A stretch of DNA of 64,000 nt from positions 44,826,001 through 44,890,000 of the forward strand of contig NC_134477.1 in assembly GCF_964194025.1 (NCBI RefSeq). Reading direction: 5' to 3'. Both the position numbers and the translations under genes were made by a program. Every line of letters begins with the position of its first letter. The first letter of the stretch is position 1. Below the pieces are notes generated by a model that was not told the DNA's origin, did no database searches, and saw nothing but the letters and a program-made list of their open reading frames with translations. This DNA is from Convolutriloba macropyga (taxonomy: Eukaryota). This document shows, piece by piece, positions 15,776-37,987 of the stretch.

Positions 15776-16106
15776 TTTTTTCTCTCCTTAACCTATCCTA
15801 AACAAAAAAAGCGCCTAAAAAGCCGCGGAAAACCAATCCTATCCTATTTTAGTAACAAAAAAACGTTCCTATCCTAGACCTAAGTCTTATGAGAAGAAAC
15901 TCAGGAAAGCAGATGAAATTTGAATTTAAAAGAAACAACACAAAAAAAATAAATACATCACATCGAAAAACCAATCTAGCACAAGAAAACAACAGGCAGA
16001 CGACTCCCTTCGCTGATCTTCTTTTCTTCTTTTTTGATTTTTCTTTGAGTTTTTTTTCAAACAATTTTGTTTCTTTTCATTTTCAAGTGACTGTGGTCTC
16101 GTCGTA

Positions 16107-19100
16107 GGGTGTCGTCTCCTCGTCCTCGGGTGTCACCGAATCCTGCAGAAAAAAAACTGAACAACACAGAACAGCAAAGAAATCCCAAGCGCCTAAGCGC
16201 AAGGGTACCCCCCAAACCGAGCCAAAGCACACCAGGGCAAAGCAAAGCCCAGCAGGAAACACCTAAAGCCCGCGCCGAAACCTAAGTGGGGAGGGAAAAG
16301 CGAAACGGAAGCGCAAAAAACCTAGCTCCTAAATCGGCGCGGGCAAAGGAGAGACTTCCCACCCTAACCTAAGCACCCTATGGGCAAAAGCAAAGCCCGG
16401 CAAAGCAACACCTAAGGCCTGCGTCAAAAAGCCTAGATGGGAGGGGGTACAAAGAGCAACGCAAATCCTTAATCCTAAGTGGCACAGGCAAAAAGGGCAA
16501 AGCACGTGCCCAAAACAAAGCAAAGCCTAAGAAGCGCGCAAAAAGCGGAGAGCACTAAGAGTGCCCAAAAACAGGAAAAGGGCGGAACAACACAGCTTAC
16601 CGACAAAAACCGAAGACGCGAAGTCCATGCAGAAGGGGTGACGACTCCACCACCAAAACCAAAGATCGTCTCAACCACCCAGTGCTCCTCGGGTGTCGTC
16701 TCCTCGTCCTCGGGTGTCACCGAATCCTGCAGAAAAAGAGAAAACTGAACAACACAGAACAGCAAAGAAATCCCAAGCGCCTAAGCGCAAGGGTACCCCC
16801 CAAACCGAGCCAAAGCACACCAGGGCAAAGCAAAGCCCAGCAAGAAACACCTAAAGCCCGCGCCGAAACCTAAGGGGGGAGGGAAAAGCGAAACGGAAGC
16901 GCAAAAAACCTAGCTCCTAAATCTGCGCGGGCAAAGGAGAGACCACCCACCCTAACCTAAGCACACTATGGGCAAAAGCAAAGCCCGGCAAAGCAACACC
17001 TAAGGCATGCGCCAAAAAGCCTAGATGGGAGGCGGTACAAAGAGCAACGCAAAACCTTAATCCTAAGTGGCGCAGGCAAAAATGGGCAAAGCACGTGCCC
17101 AAAACAAAGCAAAGCCTAAGCAGCGCGCAAAAAGCGGAGAGCCCTAAGAGTGCCCGAAAACAGGAAAAAGGGGGGGGGGAACGACACAGCTCACCGACCA
17201 AACCGAAGACGCGAAGTCCATGCAGAAGGGGTGACGACTCCACCACCAACACCAAAGGTCGTCTCCACCACCCAGGGCTCCTCGGGTGTCGTCTCCTCGT
17301 CCTCGGGTGTCACTGAATCCTGCAGAAAAAGAGAAAACTGAACAACACAGAACAGCAAAGAAATCCCAAGCGCCTAAGCGCAAGGGTACCCCCCCAAACC
17401 GAGCCAAAGCACACCAGGGCAAAGCAAAGCCCAGCAAGAAACACCTAAAGCCCGCGCCGAAACCTAAGGGGGGAGGGAAAAGCGAAACGGTAGCACAAAA
17501 AACCTAGCTCCTAAATCTGCGCGGGCAAAGGAGAGACCACCCACCCTAACCTAAGCACACTATGGGCAAAAGCAAAGCCCGTCAAAGCAAGACCTAAGGC
17601 CAGCGCCAAAAAGCCTAGATGGGAGGCGGTACAAAGAGCAACGCAAAACCTTAATCCTAAGTGGCGCAGGCAAAAAGGGGCAAAGCACGTGCCCAAAACA
17701 AAGCAAAGCCTAAGCAGCGCGCAAAAAGCGGAGAGCCCTAAGAGTGCCCGAAAACAGGAAAAAGGGGGGGGACGACACAGCTCACCGACCAAACCGAAGA
17801 CGCGAAGTCCATGCAGAAGGGGTGACGACTCCACCACCAACACCAAAGGTCGTCTCCACCACCCAGGGCTCCTCGGGTGTCGTCTCCTCGTCCTCGGGTG
17901 TCACTGAATCCTGCAGAAAAAGAGAAAACTGAACAACACAGAACAGCAAAGAAATCCCAAGCGCCTAAGCGCAAGGGTACCCCCCCAAACCGAGCCAAAG
18001 CACACCAGGGCAAAGCAAAGCCCAGCAAGAAACACCTAAAGCCCGCGCTGAAACATAAGTGGGGAGGGAAAAGCGAAACGGAAGCGCGAAAAACCTACCT
18101 CCTAAATCGGCGCAGGCAAAGGAGAGACCTCCCACCCTAACCTAAGCAACCTATGGGCAAAAGCAAAGCCCGGCAAAGCAACACCTAAGGCCTGCGCCAA
18201 AAAGCCTAGATGGGAGGGGATACAAAGAGCAACGCAAAACCTTAATCCTAAGTGGCGCAGGCAAAAAGGGCAAAGCACGTGCCCAAAACAAAGCAAAGCC
18301 TAAGCAGCGCGCAAAAAGCGGAGAGCACTAAGAGTGCCCGAAAACAGGCAAAGAGGGAACGACACAGCTTACCGACCAAACCGAAGACGCGAAGTCCATG
18401 CAGAAGGGGTGACGACTCCACCACCAACACCAAAGGTCGTCTCCACCACCCAGGGCTCCTCGGGTGTCCTCTCCTCGTCCTCGGGTGTCACCGAATCCTG
18501 CAGAAAAAGAGAAAACTGAACAACACAGAACAGCAAAGAAATCCAAAGCGCCTAAGCGCAAGGCTACCCCCCCAAACCGAGCCAAAGCACACCAGGGCAA
18601 AGCAAAGCCCAGCAAGAAACACCTAAAGCCCGCGCCGAAACCTAAGTGGGGAGGGAAAAGCGAAACGGAAGCGCAAAAAACCTAGCTCCTAAATCGGCGC
18701 GGGCAAAGGAGAGACCTCCCACCCTAACCTAAGCACCCTATGGGCAAAAGCAAAGCCCGGCAAAGCAACACCTAAGGCCTGCGACAAAAAGCCTAGATGG
18801 GAGGGGGTACAAAGAGCAACGCAAAACCTTAATCCTAAGTGGCGCAGGCAAAAAGGGCAAAGCACGTGCCCACAAAGCAAAGCCTAAGCAGCGCAAAAAA
18901 AAGCTGCGGCAGAACTTACCAAACAGAAGTGAAGAATCCCTCGTGCCCACCAGCCAGCCCCCAAACTGGACCTCACAAGGCCCTCCTCGTGTTGTCTCCT
19001 CGTCCTCGGGTGTCACCGAATCCTGCAGAAAAAGAGAAAACTGAACAACACAGAACAGCAAAGAAATCCCAAGCGCCTAAGCACAAGGGTACCCCCCAAA

Positions 19101-19510
19101 CTGAGCCAGAGCACACCAGGGCAAAGCAAAGCCCAGCCAGAAACACCTAAAGCCCGCGCCGGAACCTAAGTGGGGAGGGAAAAGCGAAACGGAAGCGCAA
19201 AAAACCTAGCTCCTAAATCGGCGCGGGCAAAGGAGAGACCACCCACCCTAACCTTAGCACACTATGGGCAAAAGCAAAGCCCGGCAAAGCAACACTTAAG
19301 GCCTGCGCCAAAAACCTTAGATGGGAGGGGGTACAAAGAGCAACGCAAAACCTTAATCCTACGTGGCGCAAGCAAAAAGGGGCAAAGCACGTGCCCAAAA
19401 CAAAGCAAAGCCTAAGCATCGCGCAAAAAGCGGAGGGCACTAAGAGTACCCGAAAACAGGAAAAGTAGGAACGACACAGCTTACCGCCCAAACCGAAGAC
19501 GCGACGTCCA
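16107..19510. repeat. ~590-bp tandem satellite, about 6 units
   Basis: Marker GGGTGTCGTCTCCTCGTCCTCGGG at 16107, 16691, 17284, 17875, 18462 and a variant near 18989. The ORF track shows the same repeated spurious ORFs. Confidence 0.95.
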
Positions 19511-19637
19511 TAAAGAAGACATCGACTTTTTTGTATACTTAGGGTGGTCGGTCTCCGCCTCATAGAATTTCCTTCACCAATTCGTGTACATAAACATGAA
19601 AAACAAAAGCAGCAAGAGTCAATTTCTTTTTTAAAGT

Positions 19638-19669
19638 AATCTATGTGTCCCTGCCAGATCACACAGATT
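19638..19669 (-). promoter_or_regulatory. Conserved-core hairpin HP1
   Basis: AATCTATGTG-TCCCTGCCAGAT-CACACAGATT; the single A.C mismatch is G.U on the minus strand. Confidence 0.65.
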
Positions 19670-19995
19670 GTTATTATCGTTTTTTTTTCAACACCGTATT
19701 GCATTTTAAAAGTTTGAAAACTTGCGCAAGAACATTTCTGCAAATTTACGTGATATCAATGCTGCAGCACAACTTTTATCATTGAGACTTTATGATCATC
19801 TCTTGTCATTCTCATTGGATAAATTTGAAGAGCACTTCGGCAAAAAAATGGCTTAACATTTTTCAACTTAAGATTTTTTTATTGCATAATTTAAAATATT
19901 TTCTGTACCTAATGTTTTGTACCAACTTTTGGAAAAACTTGAGTACTTGTCGTTTGCATTTATCTGCAGCTAAAAAATTTCAATTGTCAGTATCT

Positions 19996-20017
19996 ATGTG
20001 TCCCTGTCAGAGCACAT
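19996..20017 (-). promoter_or_regulatory. Conserved-core hairpin HP2
   Basis: ATGTG-TCCCTGTCAGAG-CACAT. Confidence 0.7.
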
Positions 20018-20482
20018 TTTTAATTTAAAAATTGCAGTTGGTTTTTTCCTACCGTGCTCAAAACCAGCATGCTCTTCGAAACAATATTTGAGAAAGAAGG
20101 AGAATTTTCAATTTTCGTTCATTAAAGTACGCTCTGTAATAAGACCAAATTAATTTTTGGGTAGTTATTTTATGTTTCGAATTAAACATTTATTTTTGCT
20201 TTTTACTGAGTTTTTAACTGTTTTCATTTTTTGCTTTCTTCTTGAAAACAATTTTAGGAACAGAAGGATTGAAAGAGAAACAAGCTTTTTTTGTTTTATT
20301 TTTTTTCTGTCAACTATTTTTTCTTTGTTTTTTACAAAAACTTTTATTATAGGACAACAAGAATTTTGAAAAATGTTGGTTCAAGAAACTGAATTGTTAA
20401 GATCTAGCATGCATTCCGAGAGAGCACCTAATCAATCAACAACCAATTTCTTACGTTAACATAACTTTTCAGAACATGAACA

Positions 20483-21046
20483 CTAGGGGTGAACTTCAAA
20501 TCTGGTGGTCAATATACTGAGGAACAGAGCGAGCACTCGCTTTTTGCCGTCCTCATTCAAATGCGCCAAATCATATGGAATGTTTTCTTTAAGAAAATGA
20601 ATGGGCCTCACATAACGAGGACCAACGTAATCAGTTTGCATAAAGTTTTGAAGAAAAATATTAGTCTGTTGTATGGGCTCGTATTCCGTATCTGGCCGAT
20701 TTAAAAGACCGACAAATTTAACTTCGACAGAATTTTCTTGTAGTCTCTTTGCGAAGCCACACAGCCTAGCAGCAGTTTATAAAGGAGTTTCAGGGGTCAG
20801 CAAAGGTTTGTTAGGGTGTTGTGAGATGTCATTGTCTCCTAATAGAAGTATGCAATGGGTGAAATTGGCACAAAACACTACTTCTTCGCCGTTCAAAAAG
20901 GCAGCTCGGAAACCGGGTCTGCAATGAAGAGTGATTTTATAGGGCCGGAGAACAACATCATTTTCAAGTTCGTTTTGAATCCTCACCAGGTTGCTGTCCC
21001 CGACTATAACGATTGAAGGACTAAAACACGCTTCGATTGAATACAT
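20483..21046 (-). pseudogene. SGNH/GDSL hydrolase (~187 aa, one in-frame TAA at 20777-20779)
   Basis: Block I IVIVGDSNL, block II RPG, block III LLLGDND. Read-through of the stop gives ...KFVGLLNRPD...YDLAHLNEDGKKRVL (block V DxxH), ending at TAG 20483. Confidence 0.8.
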
Positions 21047-21054
21047 TTTTTTCC

Positions 21055-21080
21055 CAAGCTGTCCCTGACAGCGCAGCTTG
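21055..21080 (-). promoter_or_regulatory. Conserved-core hairpin HP3
   Basis: CAAGCTG-TCCCTGACAGCG-CAGCTTG, between the transposase stop and the SGNH start. Confidence 0.7.
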
Positions 21081-21158
21081 ATTTATTATGATTAATTAAA
21101 CGCAAATTACGTACAGAAGCTTTCATTCAATAACAAAACAAAAAAAAGTTTCTTCATC

Positions 21159-23135
21159 TCAATTATGCTCGAATCCTTCTCTTATGACACTCACGATGAG
21201 AAAATTTTGCTCAACAAAAACTACAGTCTTGTGCTTTAAGTTACAAGTGGGAACCATTTCCATAGACCCTAAACCAAAAAGTTCGTATATTAGGCCAAAA
21301 TTATCAGAAGTACCAGTCAAATTTAAATCGCGGGCACTAGTAGCAGGTCTACCAACAGCATATGACACATCAGAAATTGAACAGTACGTACTAACACGAA
21401 AGAAACGACCGTCGCTTAATGGAATTACGCATTCTCCCAAGTTATTGTTAAGTCTGGAATAGGATAGCGAGCCAAAACATTGACCACTTTTATTGATAAA
21501 CCTAGAAAAAAAGAGGAAATATTCTTATTATCGCAAAAACGTAGAGTCTCGTTGTCTACCGTTGTCAGCCACTTGAGATATTTTTCAGCTTGATTATTAG
21601 TAGTGCAATTAATCGCAGCTTGGTGCTTAATAAACTGTTTAACTATAGCCTCTGGTTCTTTAATTGTCCCTTGAACAGCACTTAGAAGGTTGTGATTTGC
21701 AGACTCAAAACAAAAGGCCGAAAAAAGCCAAAGGCGTCCGTTGCGCCTAACCTGTTCACATAAGTGTCGCATTGTATGAAAGTTGAATGACTGCGAATCC
21801 ACTCCGTAAAGTTCTGAAAAATTACTGAAAAAAAGAGTTATGAGCTCATCTGCTGACTTATTGTGAGCTTCGGTTGCCGTTTGTTCAGAGAGCAGTCTCA
21901 TGGCTGTGCTGAGCACGCAGAAGCTTTTATACAAAACCCTACGGACGGGAATTTTTCTAAAAACAAGAGGTCCCACATGAAAAAAAAACAATTTGAGATC
22001 GAAAGCTTTCCAGAACTTGATCTCATCTAAAGACTTTATTCGGTGCAAAATATCGAAAGGTACTTTAATTTGCATCATTAAATTATTTGCTTCCTTCAAT
22101 TTTGACTTAGCTAAAGATACAAGCACTTTCGTCAAAACTTTACCTGTACCCAGAAAAACTTGGTGCATTGGATCAATTGGACAATCCCAAGGTAAATCTA
22201 AGATACTATTGAGGGGGGTTGAAGACTTAATGCCACATTTGATATCGCTCAGCTGCCCAACCGCAGGCTTTGAAATGCTCATTTTCGCGAAGTTTGAAGG
22301 GTTTTGTAACGGAAAACAGCATCCTATAATTTTGCCAAAAGCCTTTTATGAAACAATGAGGACATGAAGAGTAGCCGTTAAATTGATTCATACATAAAAC
22401 ACTTGCCGTCGCTGGCATGTCTGCGACAATGGTTCTGATACGAAAACGTATATTTCCTAAACCCTCAATAAGCATAATTGACTCGCACAAAGACTCGATT
22501 TCAAACACAATTAGGGGCAAAAGCTTATCAAAAAGTTGTTTTGATCTTCCATGCCAAAGACCTAGGAGAGAAAGATTTGAAAAAGCACCCCTTAGTCTTG
22601 GGGGCAAATTGAAAACTTGAACCCAAGTCGGCCAAACAGATAGTTTAGATGACTTGAAAGCTGATGCACCGTCTACATTTAAAACTAATTGTACCTCATT
22701 ACTTTTGAAGTTGTCCCATTGAGTAAACCAGGGGTAATCGTCTTGCCAAGACTTCAAAATATAAGTCGAATTTCGGATTAAAATTTTTTCGAGCTGCGTT
22801 TTCAGGTCCACACAAACAAACTTACCACTTTCATACACATTAGATGTAAGGGCTGTTAAAAATGGCATAGAAAGTTTAGCGAAAAGATTATTAGGTACTG
22901 GAAGTGCCTTAGCAAAAAGCTTCAACAAATCATTTTTTGCAATTTTTGGTAGCTTATGCTTATCAGACAAAGCTTCAAAGTCCTTCATGAAGCCTTCAGT
23001 TGAAAGGCTGGCTCCCTCGAACAACTCTGTTCCTTCCTCCTGCACCTGAAAAGCACAAAAGATTTCATTACCGTTATTGAACTGGGTTTGACTGTTTCTT
23101 TCTTCAACATTTTCTGTTTCAAAATTACCTAACAT
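21159..23135 (-). pseudogene. CMC/EnSpm (Transposase_21-like) DDE transposase, frameshifts near 22240 and 21510
   Basis: LVLNVDGASAFKSSKLSVWP, NLPPRLR, ADMPA...FNGYSSCPHC, PIDPMHQVFLG, WKAFDLK, FNFHTMRHL, SAFCFES motifs across three ORF pieces. Confidence 0.9.
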
Positions 23136-23489
23136 TATAGGAGTACCAAAAACGTCCGAAAGAGTTTGATCTTGAGGCGGCTGCGGAGAAACAGAAAAAC
23201 CTCTCGGAGACGAACTTGTGATCGGGTCGCAGCGAACAGGTGTACTTTTTTTTGGGGCTCAGGGATTGATCAATTTTCCTAAAAAACTGTTATTGCTCAA
23301 GTAAGATTCTCGATCAACATTTGAAGAACTCAAATTTTCGTATAGCGCGCGTCTAGGGGGCAGTTTTTCAAGTACAATTCTTCTTATTGGAGTTTCGGGA
23401 ATAGACGATTCTAAAGAGGAGAAACTTGGTGTCGTAATTAACTGTTCGGTTATTTTTTTGCGTTTTCTTACCGGCTCGGGATCGTTTGG

Positions 23490-24116
23490 ACAAGGGTCAC
23501 CATGCTCGCTTTTGTAGGGGCAGAGACAATTGATGTTAAACTTGCCAAAATAATGACGATTTTAAAAAACAGTTAATTCATCGCCCGTGCTAATATTCTT
23601 TGTGGCAACGCAAACCACTAATCTACCTTTTTGTCTGTATTCGACGTTCGACCTACAGGAAGCATTAACGAAAGAAATTGGACCTAGCATAAGCCATTGC
23701 TCATCTCTCATTTTACTGAAAAAAACTGACACCTCATTAAAACCTGGTATTATCTCCGCATCAGTAATTTCTGCCAGAAATCCTATGACACCATTTACTA
23801 CTTCACCTTTTTGAATATCAGATTTCGTATACAGACCTAATTGAACGTAGTCCTCATTTGGTAAGTAACTTACAGTTTTGTATTCAACCGAGAGCATACT
23901 TTTGTCGTACTCGTCGTCAAGGAACTTATGCACTGAGGTGATGTCGTTGTGTACTTCCCCACCCTCGATGAGAATCTTATGCGATGAAACAGTTTCTGTG
24001 TCCACCCACTTAGAAGTTAGTTGTTGATCAATTCTAGCTAGCTGTTTCCACGTCATAATGGACTTGGAAAAGTTTTTGGAGGCTGTGAAATAGTAATTCA
24101 ACAATCCCTGTGCCAT
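23490..24116 (-). pseudogene. SET-domain lysine methyltransferase, Suv4-20/KMT5-like, in frame with the transposase
   Basis: LGLYTKSDIQKGEVV...LMLGPISFVNASCRSNVEY...ATKNISTGDELTVF*NRHYFGKFNINCLC. The stop occupies the conserved Tyr position and is followed by a post-SET-like FG..N..CxC. Confidence 0.82.
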
Positions 24117-24298
24117 GAATCTTAAAAAGCATAGTTAAATTAGTCAGATAAGCTAGAATTTTATTGGGAGAGGGATAAAACAATTTTTCCTGAGATTCTT
24201 TAAAGCCTCATGACATTAAAAAATATTACGAAAATTCAATTAGATTGACATTATATTTTGAAACAAGAGGAGTAACTTAGCCAAAAAAGAAACTTTAT

Positions 24299-24320
24299 TA
24301 GCGTCCCTGTCAGAGCGCCA
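24299..24320 (-). promoter_or_regulatory. Conserved-core hairpin HP4
   Basis: TAGCG-TCCCTGTCAGAG-CGCCA; the A.C mismatch is G.U on the minus strand. Confidence 0.6.
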
Positions 24321-24349
24321 TTTATTTTCTCGTTTCTTAACAACCTAAA

Positions 24350-25211
24350 ATCAGTTTCGTAATTCAGATCATTTTTCATGCATCATCTTTGCTTTAGCCG
24401 AACCGTTGCTTTCTTTCATGAGTGCCGTACGCATTGGCAGCATCCTTTACACGTCTCAGGGCATAGAGGCTGTCCCCACAGAACCGTCTGACTGCTTCTA
24501 AAATTTATGTCGTAGGTAAAAAAAATTAAAAACTCCGAAAAAAAACTGAAGTTCGAAAAATTTCAACCTCGAAAATAACTTTCATCTTCCTCAGAGGCTG
24601 GTTCGCGTCCGTCCCTGACCGATCTTTGTGCAAACCAGCAAGTTATTTTTCGTTCCTCTTTTGATAGGATGCACCTCGTTAAAAACCTGCCGTACCCTGA
24701 GTTGTCATCGCTTGCACCACTGTAGGCCAAGAGATTTCGATTTTTATACATCAGCCGATTATTCGAGTTTTTCCGTTGTTTTTGACTCTGTTTAACGTTC
24801 TATGACAAAAAAGATTAATTTTAGTTTTAAACGTAACCAACTACGGTCAGCTTAATTGCTCTCAAGCGACAGGTTTCAAGCAAAAGGGTTTGTGGCCGGA
24901 TATCCAGTAGAGGGGTGCACACGGGGATTGCTTTATCAATTGCTCATAAAGTTCGATCGTTCACGCAAAACATCAGTCCAGGAAAAAAAGCACAAAAAGA
25001 ACAACAGGGCTAATATAATTGCTACAAACTTTGTTTGAAAGCAATTTAAAGAAGAACTTACAATTTTTCTCAATGATTTTTCAGCCCAAAGCAAAAAGTT
25101 GACTGCATCCACCTGAGCCATGTCTAATTGTGTTAGTGCCTCTTCAATTCTCTTAAGAACATTGACGGCGTTTCCATTCGGGCGAAACCTGGGTTGGTTT
25201 TGACCAGGCAT
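24350..25211 (-). CDS. Probable multi-exon cargo gene of unknown function
   Basis: ATG ORF 25211-24936 with a GTAAGT donor near 25060, pyrimidine-rich AG acceptors near 24800 and 24498, and coding-like piece 24751-24563. Exon structure is inferred. Confidence 0.35.
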
Positions 25212-25682
25212 TTTTCAACTTTTCAATTTATTCTGAAATCACATTTTGAGCAAACATAAATTCCTCTATAGACACGCACGACAAATTCAGTTGCCTTCAC
25301 TTTTGATCGAGAGCTGTTAAAAACGTTCGCCAAGCTATTATTTTATTAATGCGCGAGATGAATCATGCAAAAAATTCAAACGATAATTAAGTGGCCTCTC
25401 AAATATTGAATGAAGCATACATCAGAACAATAGGAAAGTTGGCCGCAAAACAAGTAGGTCATATTTGTATTATAGCCCCAAAATCAAAATGAATACTAGC
25501 CCCATGAGAAAAGTTTTTGTACTTTTGTCCAATGGCACGCAGCAATTGAATAAAACAGCACAAATATGAGAGCTCAAATCTTCAGTTATAAAACACGAAA
25601 TCAAAAGAACTGGCATCAAAATAGAACAAAAGAAAAAAATCCAGAAAGCCTTTTCGTTTTCAAAAGCAAGCCGTTTTTTAAA

Positions 25683-25714
25683 TGTTCTTGTGTCCCTGAC
25701 AGAGCACAAGCACA
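25683..25714 (-). promoter_or_regulatory. Conserved-core hairpin HP5
   Basis: CTTGTG-TCCCTGACAGAG-CACAAG, extendable by TGT/ACA after one mismatch. Confidence 0.7.
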
Positions 25715-25783
25715 CGTATTTCATTGTAACAGCTTTTAAGCGTCCTCTTGACTAGAATCAGTTTCAGGATTACGATTTTCGTT

Positions 25784-26278
25784 TCAAACTGACTTTCGCT
25801 TTCGTTGCATATCCACACCTTGTTGGTTTACGTACCTGAGAATATCACGGTATTTCACCTCATTTAAATCGTTTTTCAAAACACCCATCAAAGCGCTACG
25901 AAAAACTTCTGTTCGTTCCTCGTCTGCTGGTTCCCTCTCACCTATGAGCATTTTCCTTGGAGCAATGAAGTATTTTTTCCTTTCCTCGGAGGTCCAAATT
26001 TTGTTAGCAATAAGAAGAGCACGTTCACGGGGTGTGTTGCCGCCCAATCCCAAGAGATTAACAACATTATACATCAGCGATTCAACTTCGAAGGAGCGTT
26101 CGTTTTCTTCAATCGGGTCATCTCTGTTTTGCTCGGCATTTTCATGAAGCCGGTTGAGTTCCTCCATGGCTTTCCTCCCAAAGGTCTTCAATGAACGCAT
26201 CACATCTGTAGCGGCGTCCAGCCTTTTCTCAATTTTTGTCATAGCGAATTGGAACCGCTCCCAAGTGAACTCCTTCAA
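25784..26278 (-). CDS. Coiled-coil plus BEN-domain-like protein (probably the last exon of a gene beginning near 27270)
   Basis: ALLIANKIWTSEERKKYF...GEREPADEERTEVFRSAL...ILRYVNQQGVDMQRKRK follows the BEN pattern (FT.EE...G...LD...I...N..C.D.RR). An AG acceptor-like site lies at the ORF start. Confidence 0.55.
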   Translation of the reverse strand: MKEFTWERFQFAMTKIEKRLDAATDVMRSLKTFGRKAMEELNRLHENAEQNRDDPIEENERSFEVESLMYNVVNLLGLGGNTPRERALLIANKIWTSEERKKYFIAPRKMLIGEREPADEERTEVFRSALMGVLKNDLNEVKYRDILRYVNQQGVDMQRKRKSV

Positions 26279-26453
26279 AAAATTATTTAAGAGTTATTGA
26301 AAATTTCTAGAGCCAATAGTTTGTCGATTTGAGATAGCAACAAATATTTTCTTAACAATCACAATGGCCATCAGTTTACCTAACATCCTAAAAGTAATCC
26401 TAAGTGGTTTTGCAGTAATCTCATTGGTCAAAAATTATTGTTGTGGAGAAAAA

Positions 26454-26483
26454 CTTCATGTGTCCCTGTCAGAGCACATGAAG
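26454..26483 (-). promoter_or_regulatory. Conserved-core hairpin HP6
   Basis: CTTCATGTG-TCCCTGTCAGAG-CACATGAAG, a perfect 9-bp stem. Confidence 0.75.
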
Positions 26484-26498
26484 ACTTGATTTTTTGAA

Positions 26499-27150
26499 CT
26501 AAATTCTTACTTCATCCGATTGGCTTGATGACGAACAAGCTGCTCCTCCTTCTGGGGTTTTTGATTTCTTGGACTTTTTCGCCGCGCAACCGAAGTAATC
26601 CTCTACCAATGCGTCAACGAAGGGTGGTTTGTCCGCAACTGCCTCATTATCGATCACAAGTCGGCTTTGCGATGATGGTAAACCAATTTCCGGGCTGCAA
26701 CTTGGCCGATCATTTTGATTGTTGTCAATTCGATTGCTGCCCTGAGAGCTACCGCATCCTATATTGATAGCTTCCTCCCTCGCAGCAGCGCCGTTAGACT
26801 GACATAATTCACGCAGGTATTTATTGACATCCTTTTCATATCCTTGATATTTGAATTCTCCTAATGCTTTTCCTCCATGAGCATAACAGATAATATCAAC
26901 CTGATCTCCGTACATCAGAGAGACCTTCTGGGAGTTGTTATAGTCCAAAGGCCACCTTGGACTATCTGCCGGAATTTTACTAAATTTATCATCAATTTCG
27001 AAGTAAAACAAATAAAACCAGTTGGGTTTGCCATCCAACTGGTTTTATTTGTTTTACTTCGAAATTCGCAGTCGGAAACATTGAGAGCAGCGGCCTCTTT
27101 TTCGATCATTCGGGTTGATTTTTTTTGTAGCCTCTGGAAGTTGACTCATT
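26499..27150 (-). CDS. Cargo ORF/exon of unknown function (globular N-part, low-complexity C-part)
   Basis: 179-aa frame 27038-26499 ending at a GTAAGA donor-like site. An upstream ATGAG|GTAAGA near 27270 suggests a first exon. Confidence 0.45.
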
Positions 27151-27330
27151 GCTAAAAAATTTTTCGATTAGAGCATGATTAGAGCAAAAAGTTTGAATCG
27201 AGCATAATTTAAAATTGAGAAGAAACTTTTGAGTCATTTAAATATAAAACACAGAACCCAATTCTTACCTCATTGGCAGTGAAGACTAGAAAACAAAATG
27301 ACTCTCAAAATTTTGTTCTTGATGGAAACA

Positions 27331-27358
27331 AAAATGCGTCCCTGACAGAGCGCATTTT
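27331..27358 (-). promoter_or_regulatory. Conserved-core hairpin HP7
   Basis: AAAATGCG-TCCCTGACAGAG-CGCATTTT, a perfect 8-bp stem. Confidence 0.75.
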
Positions 27359-27431
27359 AATTTTTATTCGATTCTGAACGCAACCCGAATTAAATTTTTT
27401 TTTACAAGAGCACATTTTTTTAAAGATATTA

Positions 27432-27892
27432 TATACGAAACACATTTAAAACTTGTACCGCCTGTAGTAATTCTTGTGTGTGCGAGGAAAAACTTAGCTA
27501 TAATTCCAAACTGTTACTATAACAAAAACGCTTCTTTTCGACGAAAAAAAATTGTCTTAACCAAAGTTTTTCAAGTTTTTCATTTCTCGTAAATTAGATA
27601 GGATAAAGTTGGTTTTAAGATTTGTCCACATTTTACACAAGGGCATATAGGATGCCTCCGCTGTACCTCAATGGACACATCTGTTTTAAGTGGGACTCTC
27701 AGAAGAATGGACTACTTGCTTTTTGATAAGTTTTACGAGACATGAAAAAAATGAAGATCTTTGGTCAAGCCATATTTTTTCGTTGAAAGAAGAAAATTTG
27801 CACTATTAACTACTTGGATTTATCACTTAGGCTCACCTAGCACACGGAAGAAGGACTAAAAGCAGGACAAATATTAAATGCGCTCACTATAT
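27432..27892. repeat. Old inverted repeat with ~155-bp diverged arms, possibly a nested MITE
   Basis: The reverse complement of ~27440-27595 aligns by eye with ~27730-27885 (TTTACGAGA.ATGAAAAA...CTTTGGT.AAG...TAAATG). TATA on both flanks. Confidence 0.55.
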
Positions 27893-29040
27893 AATCACAA
27901 AAATGGTTTAAATAATTTTTTCGGGTTTCGGAAATTTTTTGCTTTTCGGCCTTGTCCATATTTTTCACAACTAAAAAAACGAAAATATCTTTTACTTGCT
28001 AACCGGCTAGCCTAAACAGAAGGGGGCTCTCACCTATAGAATGTAGGAAGGCAGACGACAGAAGAGAGCTGAAAAAGAGCAGCAAAACCAAGCAAGAACT
28101 GAAATAGAAATACTAAAATAAAAATGATAACAACATAAAAAAAAACAACAACAAACCAACACCGCGCGGATACCACTAACCAGAAGCTATACGCTACCAA
28201 CAATAATATTAGAATAATAATATTAATAGCGGAGGGACAGTGAAGAACAAGTCAGCCAGAAGGAAGAACACCAAATTTCCTTTGACTGAATAAAAAAAAG
28301 TGGACCAAGTTTTGGTTATTTTTCAACACTTTTTTAAGAAACATTAAACGCAACCCTTTTGTTATCTGTATACACACACATCATTAGACAGGCTCAAATA
28401 AAAAAACAGAGCCACAATGGGGTCGCTCCAAGATGATATATGGAAATTTTAAGGAACAGTACTAGTACCCAAAGTACAAATGTGATCAAAGAAAATGACG
28501 TATGTCAAACATCAGAGAAACCACCCCTGAGGGTGACACTCCCAGGGGACCCTTGAAACATTATTACAAACCTCTACAAACAGTACTACACACCTGTAAA
28601 CGATTTACAAACAGCTTTCAATGGAGTGAGTTGGCCCCATATTAAAAACATGGCCATGTACCGCTATACAGAGGCAAATTACATCAACTTGATGCCCGAA
28701 ATCGTGTATACAAACTGAGCTTGCCAGAAACTACATATAATTAGGGGTCTATATAGCCTATACACAACTCCGTAAGTACATTTTAAACACATTTCAATCG
28801 CCTCCACCGCTGTGTTACATACGACAATTTTGAGGCCAAAATAGGGGCCAAAGTACCATCCAAATATCAAACAGTAGTCGATGCGCGACCCCCTCAGTTT
28901 GGTAGTCCACTACACGACGAGCTTGGTGAATAAAACAGAACCAGATTTGCTTCACTATTCACATATTAATCAACAATTTGGTGTTTTGTACCATCGCTCA
29001 AAATGAGGCCACTTACCACCCCCCAACCCCCTATGGAGTC

Positions 29041-30500
29041 AAAATACACCATCTAGATCCACGAAAACCTACATATAACCATGGTTCATGAGTAACTACA
29101 TATAATGGGGGTTATAAATAGTCTATAGACGACACTAAAAGCACATTTTTAACACACTTTTTTCATCTCCGCAGCTTAGGTACCCCTCTATTAGGGTCGG
29201 ATGTTAGGACCCCTGTACCGGCAAAATACACTATCTAAATCACAGAAAACCTACATACAACTATGGTTCATGAGTAACTACATACAATAGGGGTTATAAA
29301 TAGCCTATAGACGACACTAAAAAGACATTTTTAACACACTTTTTCCATCTCCGCAGGTTAGGTACCCCCTCTATTAGGGTCGGATGTTAGGACCCCTGTA
29401 CCGGCAAAATACACCATCTAGATCCCCGCAAACCTACATACAACCATGGTTCATGAGTAACTACATATAATGGGGGTTATAAATAGCCTATAGACGACAC
29501 TAAAAGCACATTTTTAACACACTTTTTTCATCTCCGCAGCTTAGGTACCCCTCTATTAGGGTCGGATGTTAGGACCCCTGTACCGGCAAAATACACTATC
29601 TAAATCACAGAAAACCTACATACAACTATGGTTCATGAGTAACTACATACAATAGGGGTTATAAATAGCCTATAGACGACACTAAAAAGACATTTTTAAC
29701 ACACTTTTTCCATCTCCGCAGGTTAGGTACCCCCTCTATTAGGGTCGGATGTTAGGACCCCTGTACCGGCAAAATACACCATCTAGATCCCCGCAAACCT
29801 ACATACAACCATGGTTCATGAGTAACTACATATAATGGGGGTTATAAATAGCCTATAGACGACACTAAAAGCACATTTTTAACACACTTTTTTCATCTCC
29901 GCAGCTTAGGTACCCCTCTATTAGGGTCGGATGTTAGGACCCCTGTACCGGCAAAATACACTATCTAAATCACAGAAAACCTACATACAACTATGGTTCA
30001 TGAGTAACTACATACAATAGGGGTTATAAATAGCCTATAGACGACACTAAAAAGACATTTTTAACACACTTTTTCCATCTCCGCAGGTTAGGTACCCCCT
30101 CTATTAGGGTCGGATGTTAGGACCCCTGTACCGGCAAAATACACCATCTAGATCCCCGAAAACCTACATACAACCATGGTTCATGAGTAACTACATATAA
30201 TAGGGGTTATAAATAGCCTATAGACGACACTAAAAAGACATTTTTACTACACTTTTTTCATCTCCGCATGTTAGGTACCCCCTCTATAAGGGTCGGATGT
30301 TAGGACCCCTGTACCGGCAAAATACACCATCTAGATCCCAGAAAACCTGCAAACAACTATGGTTCATGAGTAACTACATATAGTGGGCGTTATAAATAAC
30401 CTATTAACATCACTAAATGTACCTTTTTAACATACTTTTTCCACCTCCGCAGGTTCGGTACAGATCACTATTTGGGTCGAAAATTGCGCCCCATTTACCG
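29041..30500. repeat. 182/183-bp satellite, 8 units, with A/B dimer higher-order structure
   Basis: AAAATACAC unit starts at 29041, 29223, 29406, 29588, 29771, 29953, 30136 and 30319. Confidence 0.95.
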
Positions 30501-31931
30501 GCTAAAAATCACACTCTGGTTCACAAAAGCCTATACGTGGTCCCCTGGGCCTTCAACAGCAATATATAACCTGTCATAATCTTCAAACAGAACAGAAATT
30601 GGTTCACTCAACAATGAGATATTTCAAAAATACCGTTTTGTAACATAGCCTAAATTTGACCTGGTTCGCGACGTATATTGTCAAATTTCACCCACACAAC
30701 TTCAGAAAACGCATAGGAAAACTTATGGGGCTCAACTGTGGAGATGACGAGGGTTGTAAATTGCTATAGTACATCGACAAAAACCGCTTATATAAAGGTA
30801 CCATTCGTCTGGTGAAAAAGAGGGTCAAAATTAAGCATTTTGCCTGAATTCAGGGGTTAATATTTTCTCAGCGACCAATACTACGCACTTCACCGGCGGC
30901 TCAAACAAAGAGGAGCTCTTGCTGAGTTCAACGATACCACACATGCTCAATTCCGTTCAGTACTTTTGGAGTACTTTTCAAAAGCACTCAATTTCATCGA
31001 AATTTTCGAAAATTACTCGATCCAGTACCATCAAAACCCCCGAAATCACCAATACCAGCCTTTGCAACGCAATTCAATGGCTGGACTTTTGTTGTCCGGG
31101 CCATTCTAAGAGTCACTCCTACCTATGCAACTCTTTCAAAAGTCTTCGTGACCCTGCACTACAATTTCACTGAATGTTTGTCTTTTTGCATAAAAAAAAA
31201 CGTTCAAAATCAAAGAAAAATTCATAAATTGTAAATTCGCAAAACATCTATCATCAGCATGTTAGGTGGCCAAGTGGAGGTCTAAAAAATGCTAGATACA
31301 CTGTTTTCCAACCCTTGATTGAGCGGAAACAGGAAAAACCTGAAAACAGAGAGTTTGGAGCTGACTAAACCGAACTCCCGAAACTTCAAAACTTGGACGT
31401 TTAAACCTTTTGTATGCAATCAAATGATGAAACAAATTACTTCTACTGGTCTTTTACTGTTCACTGTGTATCGATGTTATTGAGTTTTAATTATATGAAG
31501 CAGTGGTCACGGTATAACTCAAACAAAACGCTTCCGAACGTTGTTTTTTGCCAATTTCCTTTGTTAGACAACTGAAAACACCGGTATTAGCACAACCAAA
31601 AATGGTTTTCGCAAAAAAAAACACATGGTACTTCTTGCCGGTAAATTAATAGTGCCGGTTTGCCATAGAATGAGGTTGGAATGGTTCCAAGGTTAAAGAA
31701 GAGTTACAATTTCGAATTTCGCCTTGTACATATTATACCATCGAAAAGCGTTATGTTGTCGCCACAAAGAACTTATGGTCACCTTTTTTGGTCTAATAGA
31801 CCCCTGATATATATCAGATATTGATGTACAATTAGCGATTAAAATAACTGGACCCTTGTTGTTATTCCATGCGCTTCGAGTCATAGAAGCAGTGATTTTC
31901 TTGGAAAAAGTCAGACAAAACAAAATAAAAG

Positions 31932-34900
31932 CTTGGATGGATATTACTGGAGGCTTTGATATGACGTTTATCAGATCCTAACAACCTAACCACAGTCATT
32001 GAAAGCTATTTTGTGTGAGAAAAACATCAAACAACATTTTTTAATAATATTTTGTATTCTTATCACCGGTAAGGTCAAAATGAAATTTTCCGTTTAGGCC
32101 CGAGACAATGATTGTTTTAAGGCAAAAAATTGTTTTTGGGACCCCATTTCAGTTTTCCAGCTTTTGTTAGCATCAGTAGAAGTGCAGTTTTGCTACAGAA
32201 TGATTTTGGAAAGGACTGGAAGCTCAAGAAATGTGACCATTTATGAACTTCGCAATAAACATAATATATCACCAAAAAACGTTATATTATCACCATAAAA
32301 AGCCTATGATCAACTTTCGCGCAATCTAGGCCTGTTTTTCAACTCATCTGACTAATTATGAATAGAGATCGTGGTTACGGATACGTTGTGGTAGTTCTAT
32401 GTGCTTGGAGTCAGAGAAACAGCGTTTTTCTTGAAAAAAAATCAGATACAACAATAAAAAAAAAGCTCAGATGGATGTCACTGGAAGCCTCTGATATGAC
32501 GTTTATCAGGGCCTAACAAACTAGCCACAGTCATTGAAAGCCGTATTAATAAAAAATCCGTCAAGCAACGTTTTTTTTATCAGATTTTGTTTTCTTACTG
32601 CTATATCACCGGTAAGGTCAACATGAAATTTTGTGTTTAGGCCCGAGAGAAAAAATGTTTTATGGCAAAAAAAAATTGCACCCCAATTTTATTATTCCAG
32701 CTTTTTTTAAACCCCAGTAGAAGTGCCGTTTTGCAATAGAGTCATTTTGGAAAGGATCGGAAGCCCAAGAAAAGTGATCAATTACGAATTCCGCCATAAA
32801 CATAGTATATCACCAAAAACCGTTATATTATCACCACATAAAAACTATGATCAACTTTTTCGCTTGATCTAAGCCTTTCATTCAACTAATCTGGCTACCT
32901 ATGAATAAAGATCGTGGTTACGGAACCATTGTGGTGGTTCTACGTGCTTGGAGTCAGAGAAACAGCGTTTTTCTTGAAAAAAAAATCAGTTAAAGCAATA
33001 AAAAAGCTCAGATGGATGTCACTGGAGGCTTCAATATGACGTTTATCAGGGCCTATCAAACTAGCCACAGTCATCAAAAGCTGTATTAATAAAAAATCAT
33101 CATACAACGTTTTTTATAAGATTTTGTTTTCTTACTGCTATATCACCGGTAAGGTCAATATGAAATTTTTTGTTCAGGCCCGAGAGAAAAAATGTTTTAT
33201 GGCAAAAAATTTTGCACACCAATTTTATTATTCCAGTTTTCTGTTATCCTCAGTAGAAGTGCCGTTTTGCTATAGAATGATTTTGGAAAGGATTGGAAGC
33301 CCAAGAAAAGTGATCAATTACGAATTCCGCCATAAACATAGTATATCACCAAAAACCGTTATATTATCACCACATAAAAACTATGATCAACTTTTTCGCT
33401 TGATCTAAGCCTTTCATTCAACTAATCTGGCTACTTATGAATAAAGATCGTGGTTACGGAACCATTGTGGTGGTTCTACGTGCTTGGAGTCAGAGAAACA
33501 GCGTTTTTCTTGAAAAAAAAATCAGTTAAAGCAATAAAAAAGCTCAGATGGATGTCACTGGAGGCTTCAATATGACGTTTATCAGGGCCTATCAAACTAG
33601 CCACAGTCATCAAAAGCTGTATTAATAAAAAAATCATCATACAACGTTTTTTATAAGATTTTGTTTTCTTACTGCTATATCACCGGTAAGGTCAATATGA
33701 AATTTTTTGTTCAGGCCCGAGAGAAAAAATGTTTTATGGCAAAAAATTTTGCACACCAATTTTATTATTCCAGTTTTCTGTTATCCTCAGTAGAAGTGCC
33801 GTTTTGCTATAGAATGATTTTGGAAAGGATTGGAAGCCCAAGAAAAGTGATCATTTACGAATTTCGCCATAAACATAGTTTATCACCAAAAACCATTATA
33901 TTATCACCGCAAAAAACCTATGATCAACTTTTTCGCGTGATCTAGGCCTGTCATTCAACTTATCTGACTACTTATGAATAGAGATCTTGGTTACGGAACC
34001 GTTGTGGTGGTTCTATGCGCTTGGAGTGAGAGAAAGAGCGTTTTTCTTGAAAAAAAAGTCAGGTAAAACAGTAAAAAAGCTCAGATGGATGTCACTAGAG
34101 GCTTTGATATAACGTTCGTCAGGGCCTTACGAACTAGCCACAGTCGTTAGAAGCTCTGTTATCGAAAAAACCATCAAACAGCGTTTTTTATAAGTTTTTG
34201 TTTTCTTACTGCTATATCACCTGTAATGTCAATATGAAATTTTCTGTTTACGCCCGAGAGAAAAAAATGTTTTATGGCAAAAAAATTTCGCAACCCAATT
34301 TTACTTTTCCAGCTTTTTTTAAACCCCATTAGAAGTGCCGTTTTGCTGTAGAAGGAATTTGAAAAGATCGGAAGCCCAAGAAAAGTGACCATTTACGAAT
34401 TTCGCCATAAACATAGTTTATCACCAAAAACCATTATATTATAACCACAAAAAACATATGATCAACTTTTTCGCGTAATCTAGGCCTGTTATTTAACTCA
34501 TCTGAGTACTTATGATTAGAGATCGTGGCTACGGAACCGTTGTGGTGGTTCTATGTGCTTGGAGTCAGAGAAAGAGCGTTTTTCTTGAAAAAAAAAGTCA
34601 GGTAAAACAGTAAAAAAGCTCAGATGGATGTCAATGGAGGCTTTGATATAACGTTCGTCAGGGCCCTACAAACTAGCAACAGTTGTTAGAAGCTATGTTA
34701 ATGAAAAAACCATCAAACGGCGTTTTTTTTATAAGATTTTGCTTTCTTACTGCTATATCACCTGTAATGTCAATATGAAATTTTCTGTTTACGCCCGAGA
34801 GAAAAAAGGTTTTTTGGCAAAAAAATTTTGCACCCCAATTTTATTTTTTTTCCAGCTTTTTTTAAACCTCTATAGAAGTGCCGTTTTGCTATAGAATGAT

Positions 34901-37925: not shown

Positions 37926-37987
37926 GTTCACAAAACTTGTCAAAAAACGGCAACATCATAGAGCGATTCAATAAAGGATATTTTTCG

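What the first reader, a model, noticed from the sequence alone, without database searches (positions are those of the whole stretch)
19638..27358. Seven hairpins with a conserved 12-nt core and co-varying stems punctuate the transposon gene cluster
Seen: the core TCCCTG(A/T/C)CAGAG (minus strand CUCUGWCAGGGA) occurs 7 times in one orientation, at 19648, 20001, 21062, 24304, 25693, 26463 and 27339. Each core is closed by a G-C pair, and the stems differ in sequence yet stay complementary (AAAATGCG/CGCATTTT, CTTCATGTG/CACATGAAG, CTTGTG/CACAAG, CAAGCTG/CAGCTTG, ATGTG/CACAT). The A.C mismatches in HP1 and HP4 become G.U pairs on the minus (coding) strand. All copies are non-coding: one before the first ORF, one in each gap between successive ORFs (HP6 possibly intronic), and two after the last. 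I did not notice the motif outside this element. Inference: differing but complementary stems point to selection on structure rather than simple duplication. Candidates are an RNA signal for processing, export or translational control of a polycistronic transcript, a binding site for an element-encoded protein, or (more speculatively) ssDNA cassette-junction sites. I know of no such described system in CMC transposons.
Basis: partly seen in the sequence, partly recalled or inferred. Interest (0 to 1): 0.92.

Follow-up and report, generated by a model that had tools for sequence, protein, structure and literature searches.

The report
Conserved RNA hairpins after transposon genes
A giant jumping gene in this trans-splicing animal carries the same small hairpin just after almost every one of its genes; selection has kept it across old branches of the family, and it most likely works in the RNA to mark where each message ends or is cut from a multi-gene transcript.

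Summary
Seven hairpins share the core GCUCUGNCAGGGAC on the coding (minus) strand, all in one orientation, where 0.02 exact cores are expected by chance.

Eight further copies or paralogues of this SET-transposase CMC/EnSpm element carry the same hairpin at the same gene junctions. Their transposases are down to about 56-65% identical. Across subfamilies the stems differ in sequence but still pair: 82.6% of cells are paired and the covariation score is 0.58 against 0.19 when shuffled or slid.

Comparison refines the fold. It has a one-base bulge, a covarying pair inside the "core" (U-A, G-C, A-U, G.U), an invariant U.G pair and a G-N-N-A-G loop. G.U outnumbers A.C 20 to 4, so the structure belongs to the sense strand. 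A covariance model found 20 more hairpins in three unseen loci, all on the coding strand, and nothing convincing elsewhere.

Hairpins lie up to about 134 nt after the stop codons of four reading frames. They are often preceded by AAUAAA, and the downstream genes start just after splice acceptors.

Best reading: a new, family-specific RNA stem-loop that marks cistron 3' ends in an operon-like transposon. No RNA data could be obtained, so the mechanism is inferred. There is no Rfam match, and I found no description in the literature or in earlier notes of this scan.

The parts
27328..27361 (-). HP7: hairpin in the leader, about 55 nt upstream of the acceptor-like site before the first ATG exon of ORF-A. 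AATAAA and ATTAAA lie just 5' of it, and a TATA-like gtatataat lies about 80 nt upstream.
   Evidence: Core exact. Model R1 39.5 bits. MFE -11.9, z -3.8. Context.
26452..26485 (-). HP6: hairpin in the ORF-A/ORF-B intron. Its core starts 23 nt after the stop codon that ends ORF-A if the intron is retained.
   Evidence: R1 39.9 bits. 8-bp stem. MFE -15.1. The GAA|gtaaga donor and ttgaag|GAG acceptor are in frame. Stop distance.
25682..25715 (-). HP5: hairpin with its core 78 nt after the ORF-B (BEN-like) stop codon.
   Evidence: R1 38.7 bits..
24293..24326 (-). HP4: hairpin with its core 77 nt after the ORF-C stop codon. AATAAA ends 4 nt before the core. The stem contains a G.U pair.
   Evidence: R1 35.9 bits..
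21051..21084 (-). HP3: 'type II' hairpin (core GCGCUGNCAGGGMC) with its core 84 nt after the transposase stop and ending 14 nt before the SGNH ATG at 21046. AATAAA lies 13 nt upstream of the core.
   Evidence: R1 33.8 bits. The type II core sits at this junction in every subfamily that has the hairpin.
19990..20023 (-). HP2: first of two hairpins after SGNH, 469 nt after its stop. ATTAAA lies 11 nt upstream of the core.
   Evidence: R1 33.8 bits..
19637..19670 (-). HP1: last hairpin, with core GAUCUGGCAGGGAC (A at the bulge position, as in subfamily D) and a 9-bp stem with one G.U pair. It lies just before the 588-bp satellite array.
   Evidence: R1 34.9 bits. MFE -13.9, z -4.0; here RNAfold itself gives the bulge plus 5-nt-loop fold.
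26499..27038 (-). ORF-A (context). In this copy it is broken by a 32-nt inverted duplication.
25784..26278 (-). ORF-B (context). It is BEN-like by language-model features and is joined in frame to ORF-A by the intron that holds HP6.
24397..25211 (-). ORF-C (context). It has three conserved exons: 25211-24939, 24799-24566 and 24504-24397.
21159..24116 (-). SET-domain / CMC (DUF1258, Transposase_21) transposase gene (context). It is broken by stops in this copy.
20483..21046 (-). The start ATG GDS block is visible, but no Pfam hit was obtained here.

Best explanation
The hairpins are a new, family-specific cis-acting RNA stem-loop on the sense transcript of a giant SET-transposase CMC/EnSpm transposon.

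Fold (shown by comparison): a variable lower stem of about 5-9 bp; the closing G1-C14 pair; a one-base bulge at position 2; a covarying pair between positions 3 and 13; a C4-G12 pair; an invariant U5.G11 pair; and a G-N-N-A-G loop.

Placement (shown): one hairpin in the leader, then one shortly after the stop codon of each reading frame. This includes the stop that ends ORF-A when its intron is retained. One or two further hairpins close the cluster.

Mechanism (inferred): the gene cluster is transcribed like the host's spliced-leader operons, and each hairpin defines the 3' end of the upstream message. An A-rich, AAUAAA-type signal lies 5' of the hairpin and a U-rich tract lies 3' of it. The exposed loop dinucleotide (C/A/U)-A sits where cleavage would be expected. 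Each downstream cistron then begins at its own acceptor.

A hairpin-binding factor, from the host or the element, probably reads the bulge and loop. That would place all the element's messages under one control, as the histone 3' stem-loop or iron-responsive elements do.
For: Real and non-random.

Same hairpin at the same six junctions in subfamilies A, B, C, D, E and F (transposase about 56-65% identical across subfamilies), with unrelated stems.

Covariation on 34 hairpins: 82.6% of cells paired against 60% shuffled; covariation score 0.58 against 0.185 (0 of 500 shuffles reach it); slid partners score at most 0.19.

Pair 3-13 inside the core: U-A 22, G-C 7, A-U 1, G.U 1, U.G 1, unpaired 2. 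The thermodynamic alternative fold fails in 9-10 of 34 sequences.

Strand: G.U 20 against A.C 4 in the inner stem, p=0.0015, plus the invariant U.G pair. All 38 + 20 model hits above 23 bits are on the coding strand.

Out-of-sample prediction in three new loci.

Purifying selection: 3.3% differences in hairpins against 10.4% in the +/-120-nt flanks, odds ratio 0.30, p=9e-10.

Placement: distance from stop codon to core runs from -6 to 134 nt for ORF-A (unspliced), ORF-B, ORF-C and the transposase wherever a hairpin is present, apart from one outlier of 209 nt (ORF-A in L002).

AATAAA or ATTAAA starts 10-22 nt before the core in 10 of 36 hairpins, against 4-7% in controls. There is an A-rich block 5' and T enrichment 3'.

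A polypyrimidine-AG acceptor lies 2-21 nt before most of the ORF-C and SET-transposase ATGs that could be read. The host uses spliced-leader trans-splicing and operons according to earlier notes of this scan, which I did not test.
Against: No RNA evidence exists. The only runs that hold the element behave like DNA, with even depth and no splice joints. So transcription, polycistrony, trans-splicing and the position of 3' ends are all inferred.

Canonical AAUAAA is absent before most hairpins in subfamilies C, D, E and F.

Where AAUAAA is present, the hairpin sits on the expected cleavage zone and sometimes pairs with the hexamer. That could equally mean it suppresses the site.

The leader hairpin has no upstream gene to terminate.

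The hairpins after SGNH lie 169-4469 nt from its stop.

Subfamily E lacks detectable hairpins after ORF-B and ORF-C.

Sister clades G/H/I/J lack this hairpin and show no significant general post-stop hairpin. So it is not indispensable for this gene layout.
Confidence: 0.5

Rival explanations
1. The hairpins are protein-binding RNA elements that do not direct cleavage. They would form a shared post-transcriptional 'regulon' tag, comparable to IRE/IRP or Rev-RRE. The tag would recruit one factor to the leader, intron and 3' UTRs of the element's transcripts to control stability, export of intron-containing RNA, translation or escape from nonsense-mediated decay after each stop codon.
For: The bulge-plus-conserved-loop design is typical of protein-binding hairpins (fold). 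Copies occur in a leader and an intron as well as after stop codons. Sister clades carry other fixed loops on variable stems, GGUAGC in L003 and L005, in leaders and introns rather than after stops. This hints at clade-specific recognition. AAUAAA is not universal.
Against: No RNA-binding domain was recognised in the element's proteins. The tight link to stop codons and the A-rich/U-rich flanks are more specific than this model needs.
Confidence: 0.25
2. The hairpins are intercistronic elements that recruit the spliced-leader snRNP or protect the downstream RNA after upstream cleavage, as the nematode Ur element does. They would serve the downstream cistron rather than the upstream one.
For: The hairpins lie between each stop codon and the next acceptor. 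One sits in the leader before the first acceptor. The host has operons according to earlier notes.
Against: The distance to the next acceptor or ATG varies from about 15 to about 1000 nt, whereas the distance to the upstream stop is short. The UAYYUU motif that defines the Ur element is not significantly enriched after the hairpins: 5 of 36 against 6.5% in controls.
Confidence: 0.1
3. The hairpins act at the DNA level. The conserved quasi-palindromic core would be a double-stranded binding site, for example for the element's BEN-like proteins, acting as a boundary or insulator between genes. The complementary flanks would be incidental or would favour cruciform formation.
For: The core contains CTGNCAG. 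ORF-B is BEN-like, and BEN proteins bind short DNA motifs (general knowledge). The sites lie at gene boundaries.
Against: Double-stranded binding does not explain stems that differ in sequence yet stay complementary. It does not explain the 20:4 excess of G.U over A.C on the coding strand or the invariant U.G, which would be A.C on the other strand. It does not explain the 3-13 covariation around a bulge or the strict co-orientation with the genes.
Confidence: 0.08
4. The hairpins are a mutational by-product. Template-switch events at a small quasi-palindrome would extend it outward and create complementary flanks without any selection on structure.
For: Such events do happen here. This copy carries a private 32-nt inverted duplication in ORF-A that makes a near-perfect long palindrome.
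Against: The hairpins are retained at orthologous junctions through the divergence of subfamilies (transposase about 56-65% identical). They evolve three times more slowly than their flanks. They show wobble-preserving changes and a strand-biased G.U excess. They keep an asymmetric core with a bulge.
Confidence: 0.04
5. The hairpins are single-stranded-DNA recombination sites that delimit mobile gene cassettes, like integron attC sites.
For: The hairpins are co-oriented between co-oriented genes, and the structure is strand-specific.
Against: Gene order is identical in every subfamily examined, so there is no sign of cassette shuffling. No tyrosine, serine or HUH recombinase gene was recognised among the conserved genes of the cluster. 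Conservation sits in the apical part with variable stems, the reverse of attC.
Confidence: 0.02

Closest known systems
Histone mRNA 3' stem-loop (SLBP site; Rfam RF00032)
   Same: Both are a short conserved stem-loop placed a few tens of nucleotides after the stop codon of every member of a gene set. Both have an A-rich 5' flank. There is even a partial sequence likeness (5' arm GCUCU, 3' arm AG.G.C).
   Different: The fold differs. The histone element has a 6-bp stem and a U-rich 4-nt loop. This hairpin has a bulge, a covarying 3-13 pair and a GNNAG loop on a variable lower stem. There is no Rfam match even at E<=10. AAUAAA often precedes this hairpin, whereas histone messages are not polyadenylated.
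'Hairpin rule' of giant viruses (Mimiviridae, Marseilleviridae; PMC3058096, PMC5413956)
   Same: Both are mobile or viral genomes in which a palindromic hairpin follows each gene and is tied to transcript 3'-end formation.
   Different: As I recall the literature, the viral hairpins have no conserved loop or core and are processed by viral enzymes in a cytoplasmic factory. Here the apical 14 nt are conserved and the element is a nuclear DNA transposon. 3' ends at the hairpins are not yet shown here.
Ur element of nematode operon intercistronic regions (context: PMC7668243)
   Same: Both are a stem-loop located between cistrons of a spliced-leader-resolved operon.
   Different: As I recall it, the Ur element is a loosely defined stem-loop followed by UAYYUU and positioned relative to the downstream trans-splice site. 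This hairpin has a fixed core, is positioned relative to the upstream stop, and UAYYUU is not enriched after it.
Iron-responsive elements and similar bulge-plus-loop protein-binding hairpins (IRE, MS2/PP7 operators, boxB)
   Same: The design is shared: variable helix, single bulged base, short upper helix, conserved loop. Multiple copies occur in untranslated regions of co-regulated messages.
   Different: There is no sequence relation. The IRE needs a C bulge and a CAGUGN loop. The binding partner here is unknown.
Bacterial REP/BIME elements and integron attC sites
   Same: Both are co-oriented imperfect palindromes that punctuate genes of one transcription unit.
   Different: They are prokaryotic and depend on RAYT or IntI enzymes, or act as exonuclease barriers. 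attC conserves the outer boxes rather than the apex. No such enzyme gene was recognised here and gene order is fixed.

Membership tests
Histone 3' stem-loop (RF00032) | Match to the family covariance model | tested here: not met
   No Histone3 hit at gathering score or at E<=10 on 19500-27500.
Histone 3' stem-loop (RF00032) | 6-bp stem closed by a 4-nt U-rich loop | tested here: not met
   Comparison supports a bulge, a 3-bp upper helix and a GNNAG loop. The histone-like register fails in 9-10 of 34 sequences.
Histone 3' stem-loop (RF00032) | Position shortly after the stop codon, at the mRNA 3' end | tested here: inconclusive
   The distance from the stop is short, but RNA 3' ends could not be mapped.
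Giant-virus-type 'hairpin rule' 3' ends | A hairpin follows each gene | tested here: met
   A hairpin follows ORF-A (unspliced), ORF-B, ORF-C, the transposase and SGNH in most subfamilies.
Giant-virus-type 'hairpin rule' 3' ends | Mature transcripts end at the hairpin | not testable with these tools
   No RNA run holding the element was available. X1-X4 behave as DNA.
Nematode Ur element | Stem-loop followed by a UAYYUU motif | tested here: not met
   UAYYUU occurs within 40 nt in 5 of 36 hairpins against 6.5% in controls, which is not significant.
Nematode Ur element | Fixed position upstream of the downstream trans-splice site | tested here: not met
   The distance from hairpin to next acceptor or ATG ranges from about 15 to about 1000 nt.
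Integron attC-like ssDNA sites | Associated site-specific recombinase | tested here: not met
   Only SET and DDE-type transposase domains were recognised, and no recombinase family was hit.
Integron attC-like ssDNA sites | Variable cassette content or order between sites | tested here: not met
   The same gene order is found in all 12 related loci.
Iron-responsive element | C bulge five pairs below a CAGUGN loop | tested here: not met
   The bulge base varies (C 25, A 8, U 2, G 1) and the loop is GNNAG. There is no Rfam IRE hit.
Canonical polyadenylation site | AAUAAA/AUUAAA 10-30 nt upstream of cleavage, with a U/GU-rich downstream element | tested here: inconclusive
   The hexamer is enriched (10 of 36 against 4-7%) and starts 10-22 nt before the core, with T enrichment downstream. 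It is absent in most hairpins of subfamilies C-F, and the cleavage sites are unknown.

The most novel reading that the evidence does not exclude
The element runs its own RNA 'punctuation' system. A dedicated factor that recognises the bulge and loop of the hairpin would define or cut the ends of every message of a polycistronic transposon transcript, largely independent of the host's ordinary signals. Hairpin loop and factor would co-evolve, which would explain why sister clades carry other fixed loops (GGUAGC; GCAACUGAGGUAC) on variable stems. This would be a transposon counterpart of the tRNA punctuation of mitochondrial transcripts or the giant-virus hairpin rule, in an animal nucleus.
Probability: 0.25. 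Interest if true: 0.9.

Novelty: new variant of a known kind. Interest (0 to 1): 0.72.

Why it matters
I found no description of multi-gene DNA transposons in animals that carry their own conserved RNA structural signals, and how such elements express five genes from one compact cluster is open. Here a 34-nt stem-loop shows textbook covariation, a strand-specific wobble signature and fixed synteny, and it predicts new copies in unseen loci. It offers a concrete handle for asking how a giant transposon organises its transcripts in a host that uses spliced-leader operons. If RNA ends map to the hairpins, this would be the first hairpin-defined gene punctuation in a nuclear animal mobile element. 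It would also yield a compact, portable processing or regulatory tag. If they do not, it is still a new structured RNA family with an unknown binding partner.

Tried and rejected
1. Rfam gave no family at gathering score over the whole window. At E<=10 the only hits were weak miRNA-like matches, which are caused by an unrelated 32-nt inverted duplication in ORF-A.

2. RNA evidence could not be obtained. Both run searches returned the same four runs of unknown kind. When laid on 20900-26899 they show even depth over genes and spacers and no joints, so they behave as DNA. The run tools are now exhausted.

3. A scan of JGI metagenome contigs for an 18-nt form of the core gave 57 single hits in GC-rich contigs. 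None has a second hairpin, and most score 18-26 bits. I judged them to be chance matches.

4. Homologue searches with the transposase and the SGNH gene returned only ENA assembly proteins. No transcript-derived entries came back that could show UTRs. The exhaustive representative search led to one more locus of the same assembly, L069, which has no such hairpin.

5. The histone stem-loop reading was rejected on fold and on Rfam.

6. The Ur-element reading fails because UAYYUU is not enriched.

7. A general "any hairpin after each stop" rule in the distant subfamilies L003-L005 was tested by sliding-window folding and is not significant.

8. Language-model look-alikes for ORF-A and an ORF-C exon were uninformative.

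9. The core-like 14-mer at 24611-24624 lies in a conserved coding exon and has no stem, so it is not part of the set.

10. Literature searches found no description of such hairpins in CMC/EnSpm elements.
Full report
**What is in the window.** The + strand 12-mer TCCCTGNCAGAG occurs exactly five times, where dinucleotide shuffles give 0.02. Two further copies differ by one base. All seven are in one orientation, between 19.6 and 27.4 kb. They lie inside the gene cluster of a large CMC/EnSpm-type transposon whose genes run on the minus strand:
- ORF-A
- ORF-B, which is BEN-like by language-model features
- a three-exon ORF-C
- a SET-domain/transposase gene, matching SET, DUF1258 and Transposase_21

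That agrees with the palindromic TCTTGCAAGA arrays I see at 15.6 and 38.0 kb. Read on the coding strand the core is GCUCUGNCAGGGAC. The sequence directly flanking each core pairs over 4-9 bp, whereas only 2.8% of random positions in the same DNA give 4 bp or more. Each 38-nt piece folds better than its shuffles, with z from -2.3 to -4.0. Rfam has no match.

**Related copies.** A protein search with the transposase found paralogues in two ENA assemblies. I fetched twelve loci and grouped them by pairwise identity of the transposase:
- subfamily A: window, L001, L009
- B: L002
- C: L006
- D: L007, L010
- E: L011
- F: L008
- more distant G, H, I, J: L003, L005, L004, L069

tblastn with the window's reading frames shows the same gene order in all of them. 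In subfamilies A to F the same core is present on the coding strand at the same junctions:
- before ORF-A
- between ORF-A and ORF-B
- after ORF-B
- after ORF-C
- after the transposase
- once or twice after SGNH

A few positions are missing in E and F. The stems at corresponding junctions of different subfamilies are unrelated in sequence but still complementary. The junction after the transposase always carries a distinct subtype (GCGCUGNCAGGGCC and its variants). The hairpins are therefore old, and they are orthologous position by position.

**Structure.** An ungapped alignment of 34 hairpins (A1) was scored against an explicit structure.
- 82.6% of cells are standard pairs, against 60% when partners are shuffled.
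- The covariation score is 0.58 against 0.185, and 0 of 500 shuffles reach it.
- Sliding the 3' partner by 1-3 columns gives at most 0.19.
- The two pairs next to the core pair in 100% and 94% of sequences, with five and three pair types.

Comparison also corrects the picture of an unpaired 12-nt loop. Position 3 pairs with position 13 (U-A 22, G-C 7, A-U 1, G.U 1, U.G 1, unpaired 2). Position 2 is a bulge that may be any base. C4-G12 and U5.G11 follow, and the loop is G-N-N-A-G with G6, A9 and G10 invariant. The fold that RNAfold prefers for the commonest core (a 3-nt loop with A13 bulged) fails in 9-10 of 34 sequences and shows no covariation.

**Strand and selection.** In the six stem pairs nearest the core, G.U occurs 20 times and A.C 4 times (p=0.0015; base composition alone predicts about 55:45). 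The invariant U5.G11 would be an A.C mismatch on the other strand. The structure therefore belongs to the coding-strand sequence, which most simply means the sense RNA.

A covariance model built from A1 recovers its 38 training-family hairpins and reports nothing on the opposite strand in 233 kb; its five extra hits, all of 18 bits or less, also lie on the coding strand of related loci. Applied to three loci that were not used to build it, the model finds 7, 8 and 5 hairpins, again all on the coding strand and at the expected junctions.

Between close relatives (A against A, D against D), hairpins differ at 3.3% of positions and the surrounding +/-120 nt at 10.4% (odds ratio 0.30, p=9e-10). 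The stem changes seen are mostly C-G to U.G or G-C to G.U. A purely mutational origin is real in this genome: the window's ORF-A carries a private 32-nt inverted duplication. It does not, however, explain the retention, the slow change or the strand bias.

**Placement.** The distance from the stop codon of the upstream reading frame to the core is short wherever a hairpin is present:

| Upstream frame | Stop-to-core distance (nt) |
|---|---|
| ORF-A read into its intron | 2-23 (one outlier of 209 in L002) |
| ORF-B | -6 to 78 (in L007 the stop lies inside the core) |
| ORF-C | 13-77 |
| Transposase | 44-134 |
| SGNH | 169-4469 |

By contrast, the distance from a hairpin to the next ATG ranges from about 15 to about 1000 nt. 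The hairpins therefore belong to the upstream reading frames.

AATAAA or ATTAAA starts 10-22 nt before the core in 10 of 36 non-redundant hairpins, against 4-7% in controls (p from 2e-4 to 8e-7). The hexamer-bearing hairpins are mostly in subfamilies A and B. An A-rich block precedes the stem and T is enriched downstream.

ORF-A ends at a donor (GAA|gtaaga) and ORF-B begins at an acceptor (ttgaag|GAG). The two are in frame, and protein conservation runs up to that acceptor. HP6 is therefore intronic in the fused message, and it follows the stop codon of the unspliced short form.

Most of the ORF-C and SET-transposase ATGs that could be read are preceded at 2-21 nt by a polypyrimidine-AG acceptor. 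According to earlier notes of this scan, the host uses a spliced leader and has operons. I did not test this.

**Interpretation.**
- Shown: a family-specific stem-loop, under purifying selection for pairing on the sense strand, fixed at the end of each reading frame of the element.
- Inferred: the cluster is expressed like a host operon, and the hairpin takes part in defining each upstream 3' end. The arrangement of A-rich signal, hairpin and U-rich tract puts the exposed loop where cleavage would be expected. The base before the invariant A9 is C, A or U but never G.

A conserved bulge and loop on a free-sequence helix is the usual design of a protein-binding RNA hairpin. A trans-acting reader is therefore likely, but its identity is unknown. 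None of the element's proteins shows a recognisable RNA-binding domain.

The main weakness is the complete lack of RNA data. The four runs that hold the element have even depth and no splice joints, so they behave as DNA. Other weaknesses:
- AAUAAA is not universal.
- The leader hairpin has no upstream gene.
- Where AAUAAA is present, the stem can overlap it, which would also fit suppression of that site.
- The distant clades G-J keep the same gene layout without this hairpin.

**Other loop types.** L003 and L005 carry another hairpin on the coding strand, with the fixed loop GGUAGC and variable 5-9-bp stems. It occurs twice upstream of ORF-A, once in the ORF-A/ORF-B intron and, in L005, once in an ORF-C intron. 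GGTAGC sites in the other loci almost never have stems. L069 has GCAACUGAGGUAC in a 91-bp tandem array and once as an isolated hairpin with a different stem. The L069 evidence is weak, because the array copies are duplicates. Together these hint that the "fixed apex, free stem" design recurs with clade-specific loops. That would fit co-evolution with a specific reader, but this is a lead, not a result.

**Comparison with known systems.** The closest analogues in how they work are:
- the histone 3' stem-loop (same placement; different fold; no Rfam match)
- the giant-virus hairpin rule (a hairpin after each gene, but without a conserved apex)
- the nematode Ur element (a stem-loop in operon spacers, but its UAYYUU motif is not enriched here)
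- bulge-loop regulons such as IRE

The hairpin is a member of none of them. Integron-like cassette sites are excluded by the fixed gene order and the lack of any recognised recombinase. Literature searches and the notes of this scan gave no earlier description.

**Verdict.** Interest is 0.72.

Noticed in passing
window 26990-27070: This copy of ORF-A carries a private 32-nt insertion that is the inverted copy of the adjacent sequence. It creates a near-perfect palindrome of about 27 bp, breaks the reading frame and draws weak miRNA-precursor hits from Rfam. It is absent in L001 and L009. It looks like a template-switch inverted duplication.
   Followed up: yes
L003 5664, 5766, 7213; L005 5535, 5588, 6980, 8154 (coding strand): The distant subfamilies carry a second hairpin class with a fixed GGUAGC loop and variable 5-9-bp stems. 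It lies in the leader and in introns rather than after stop codons. GGTAGC sites in the other loci almost never have stems.
   Followed up: partly
L069 7284-7931 and 14332-14360: The motif GCAACTGAGGTAC occurs in eight copies of a 91-bp tandem repeat upstream of an intact 1006-aa SET-transposase. It also occurs once downstream as an isolated hairpin with a different 8-bp stem. It shares CUG..AGG..AC with the main core.
   Followed up: partly
window 24994-25046: In the laid contigs a stretch of about 50 nt reaches a word depth of 12,000-120,000, against 25-500 for the rest of the element. Many unrelated loose ends flank it on both sides. A very abundant short repeat or low-complexity tract is embedded between ORF-C exons.
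   Followed up: no
window 24611-24624: A core-like 14-mer (GATCGGTCAGGGAC on the coding strand) lies inside the conserved second exon of ORF-C and is also present in L001. It has no flanking stem and appears to be coding sequence.
   Followed up: partly
L007 7370-7383: In subfamily D the ORF-B stop codon (TGA) lies inside the hairpin core itself, so the reading frame ends within the structure.
   Followed up: no
window 57607 (minus strand): A GGTAGC loop closed by a 10-bp stem lies near long minus-strand ORFs at 58201-59055 and 59630-60151. It may belong to another element of the GGUAGC-hairpin type.
   Followed up: no
window 16086-19518, 29028-30578, 31905-37977: Three tandem arrays (periods of about 590, 183 and 537 bp) lie between palindromic TCTTGCAAGA arrays at 15.6 and 38.0 kb.
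   Followed up: no
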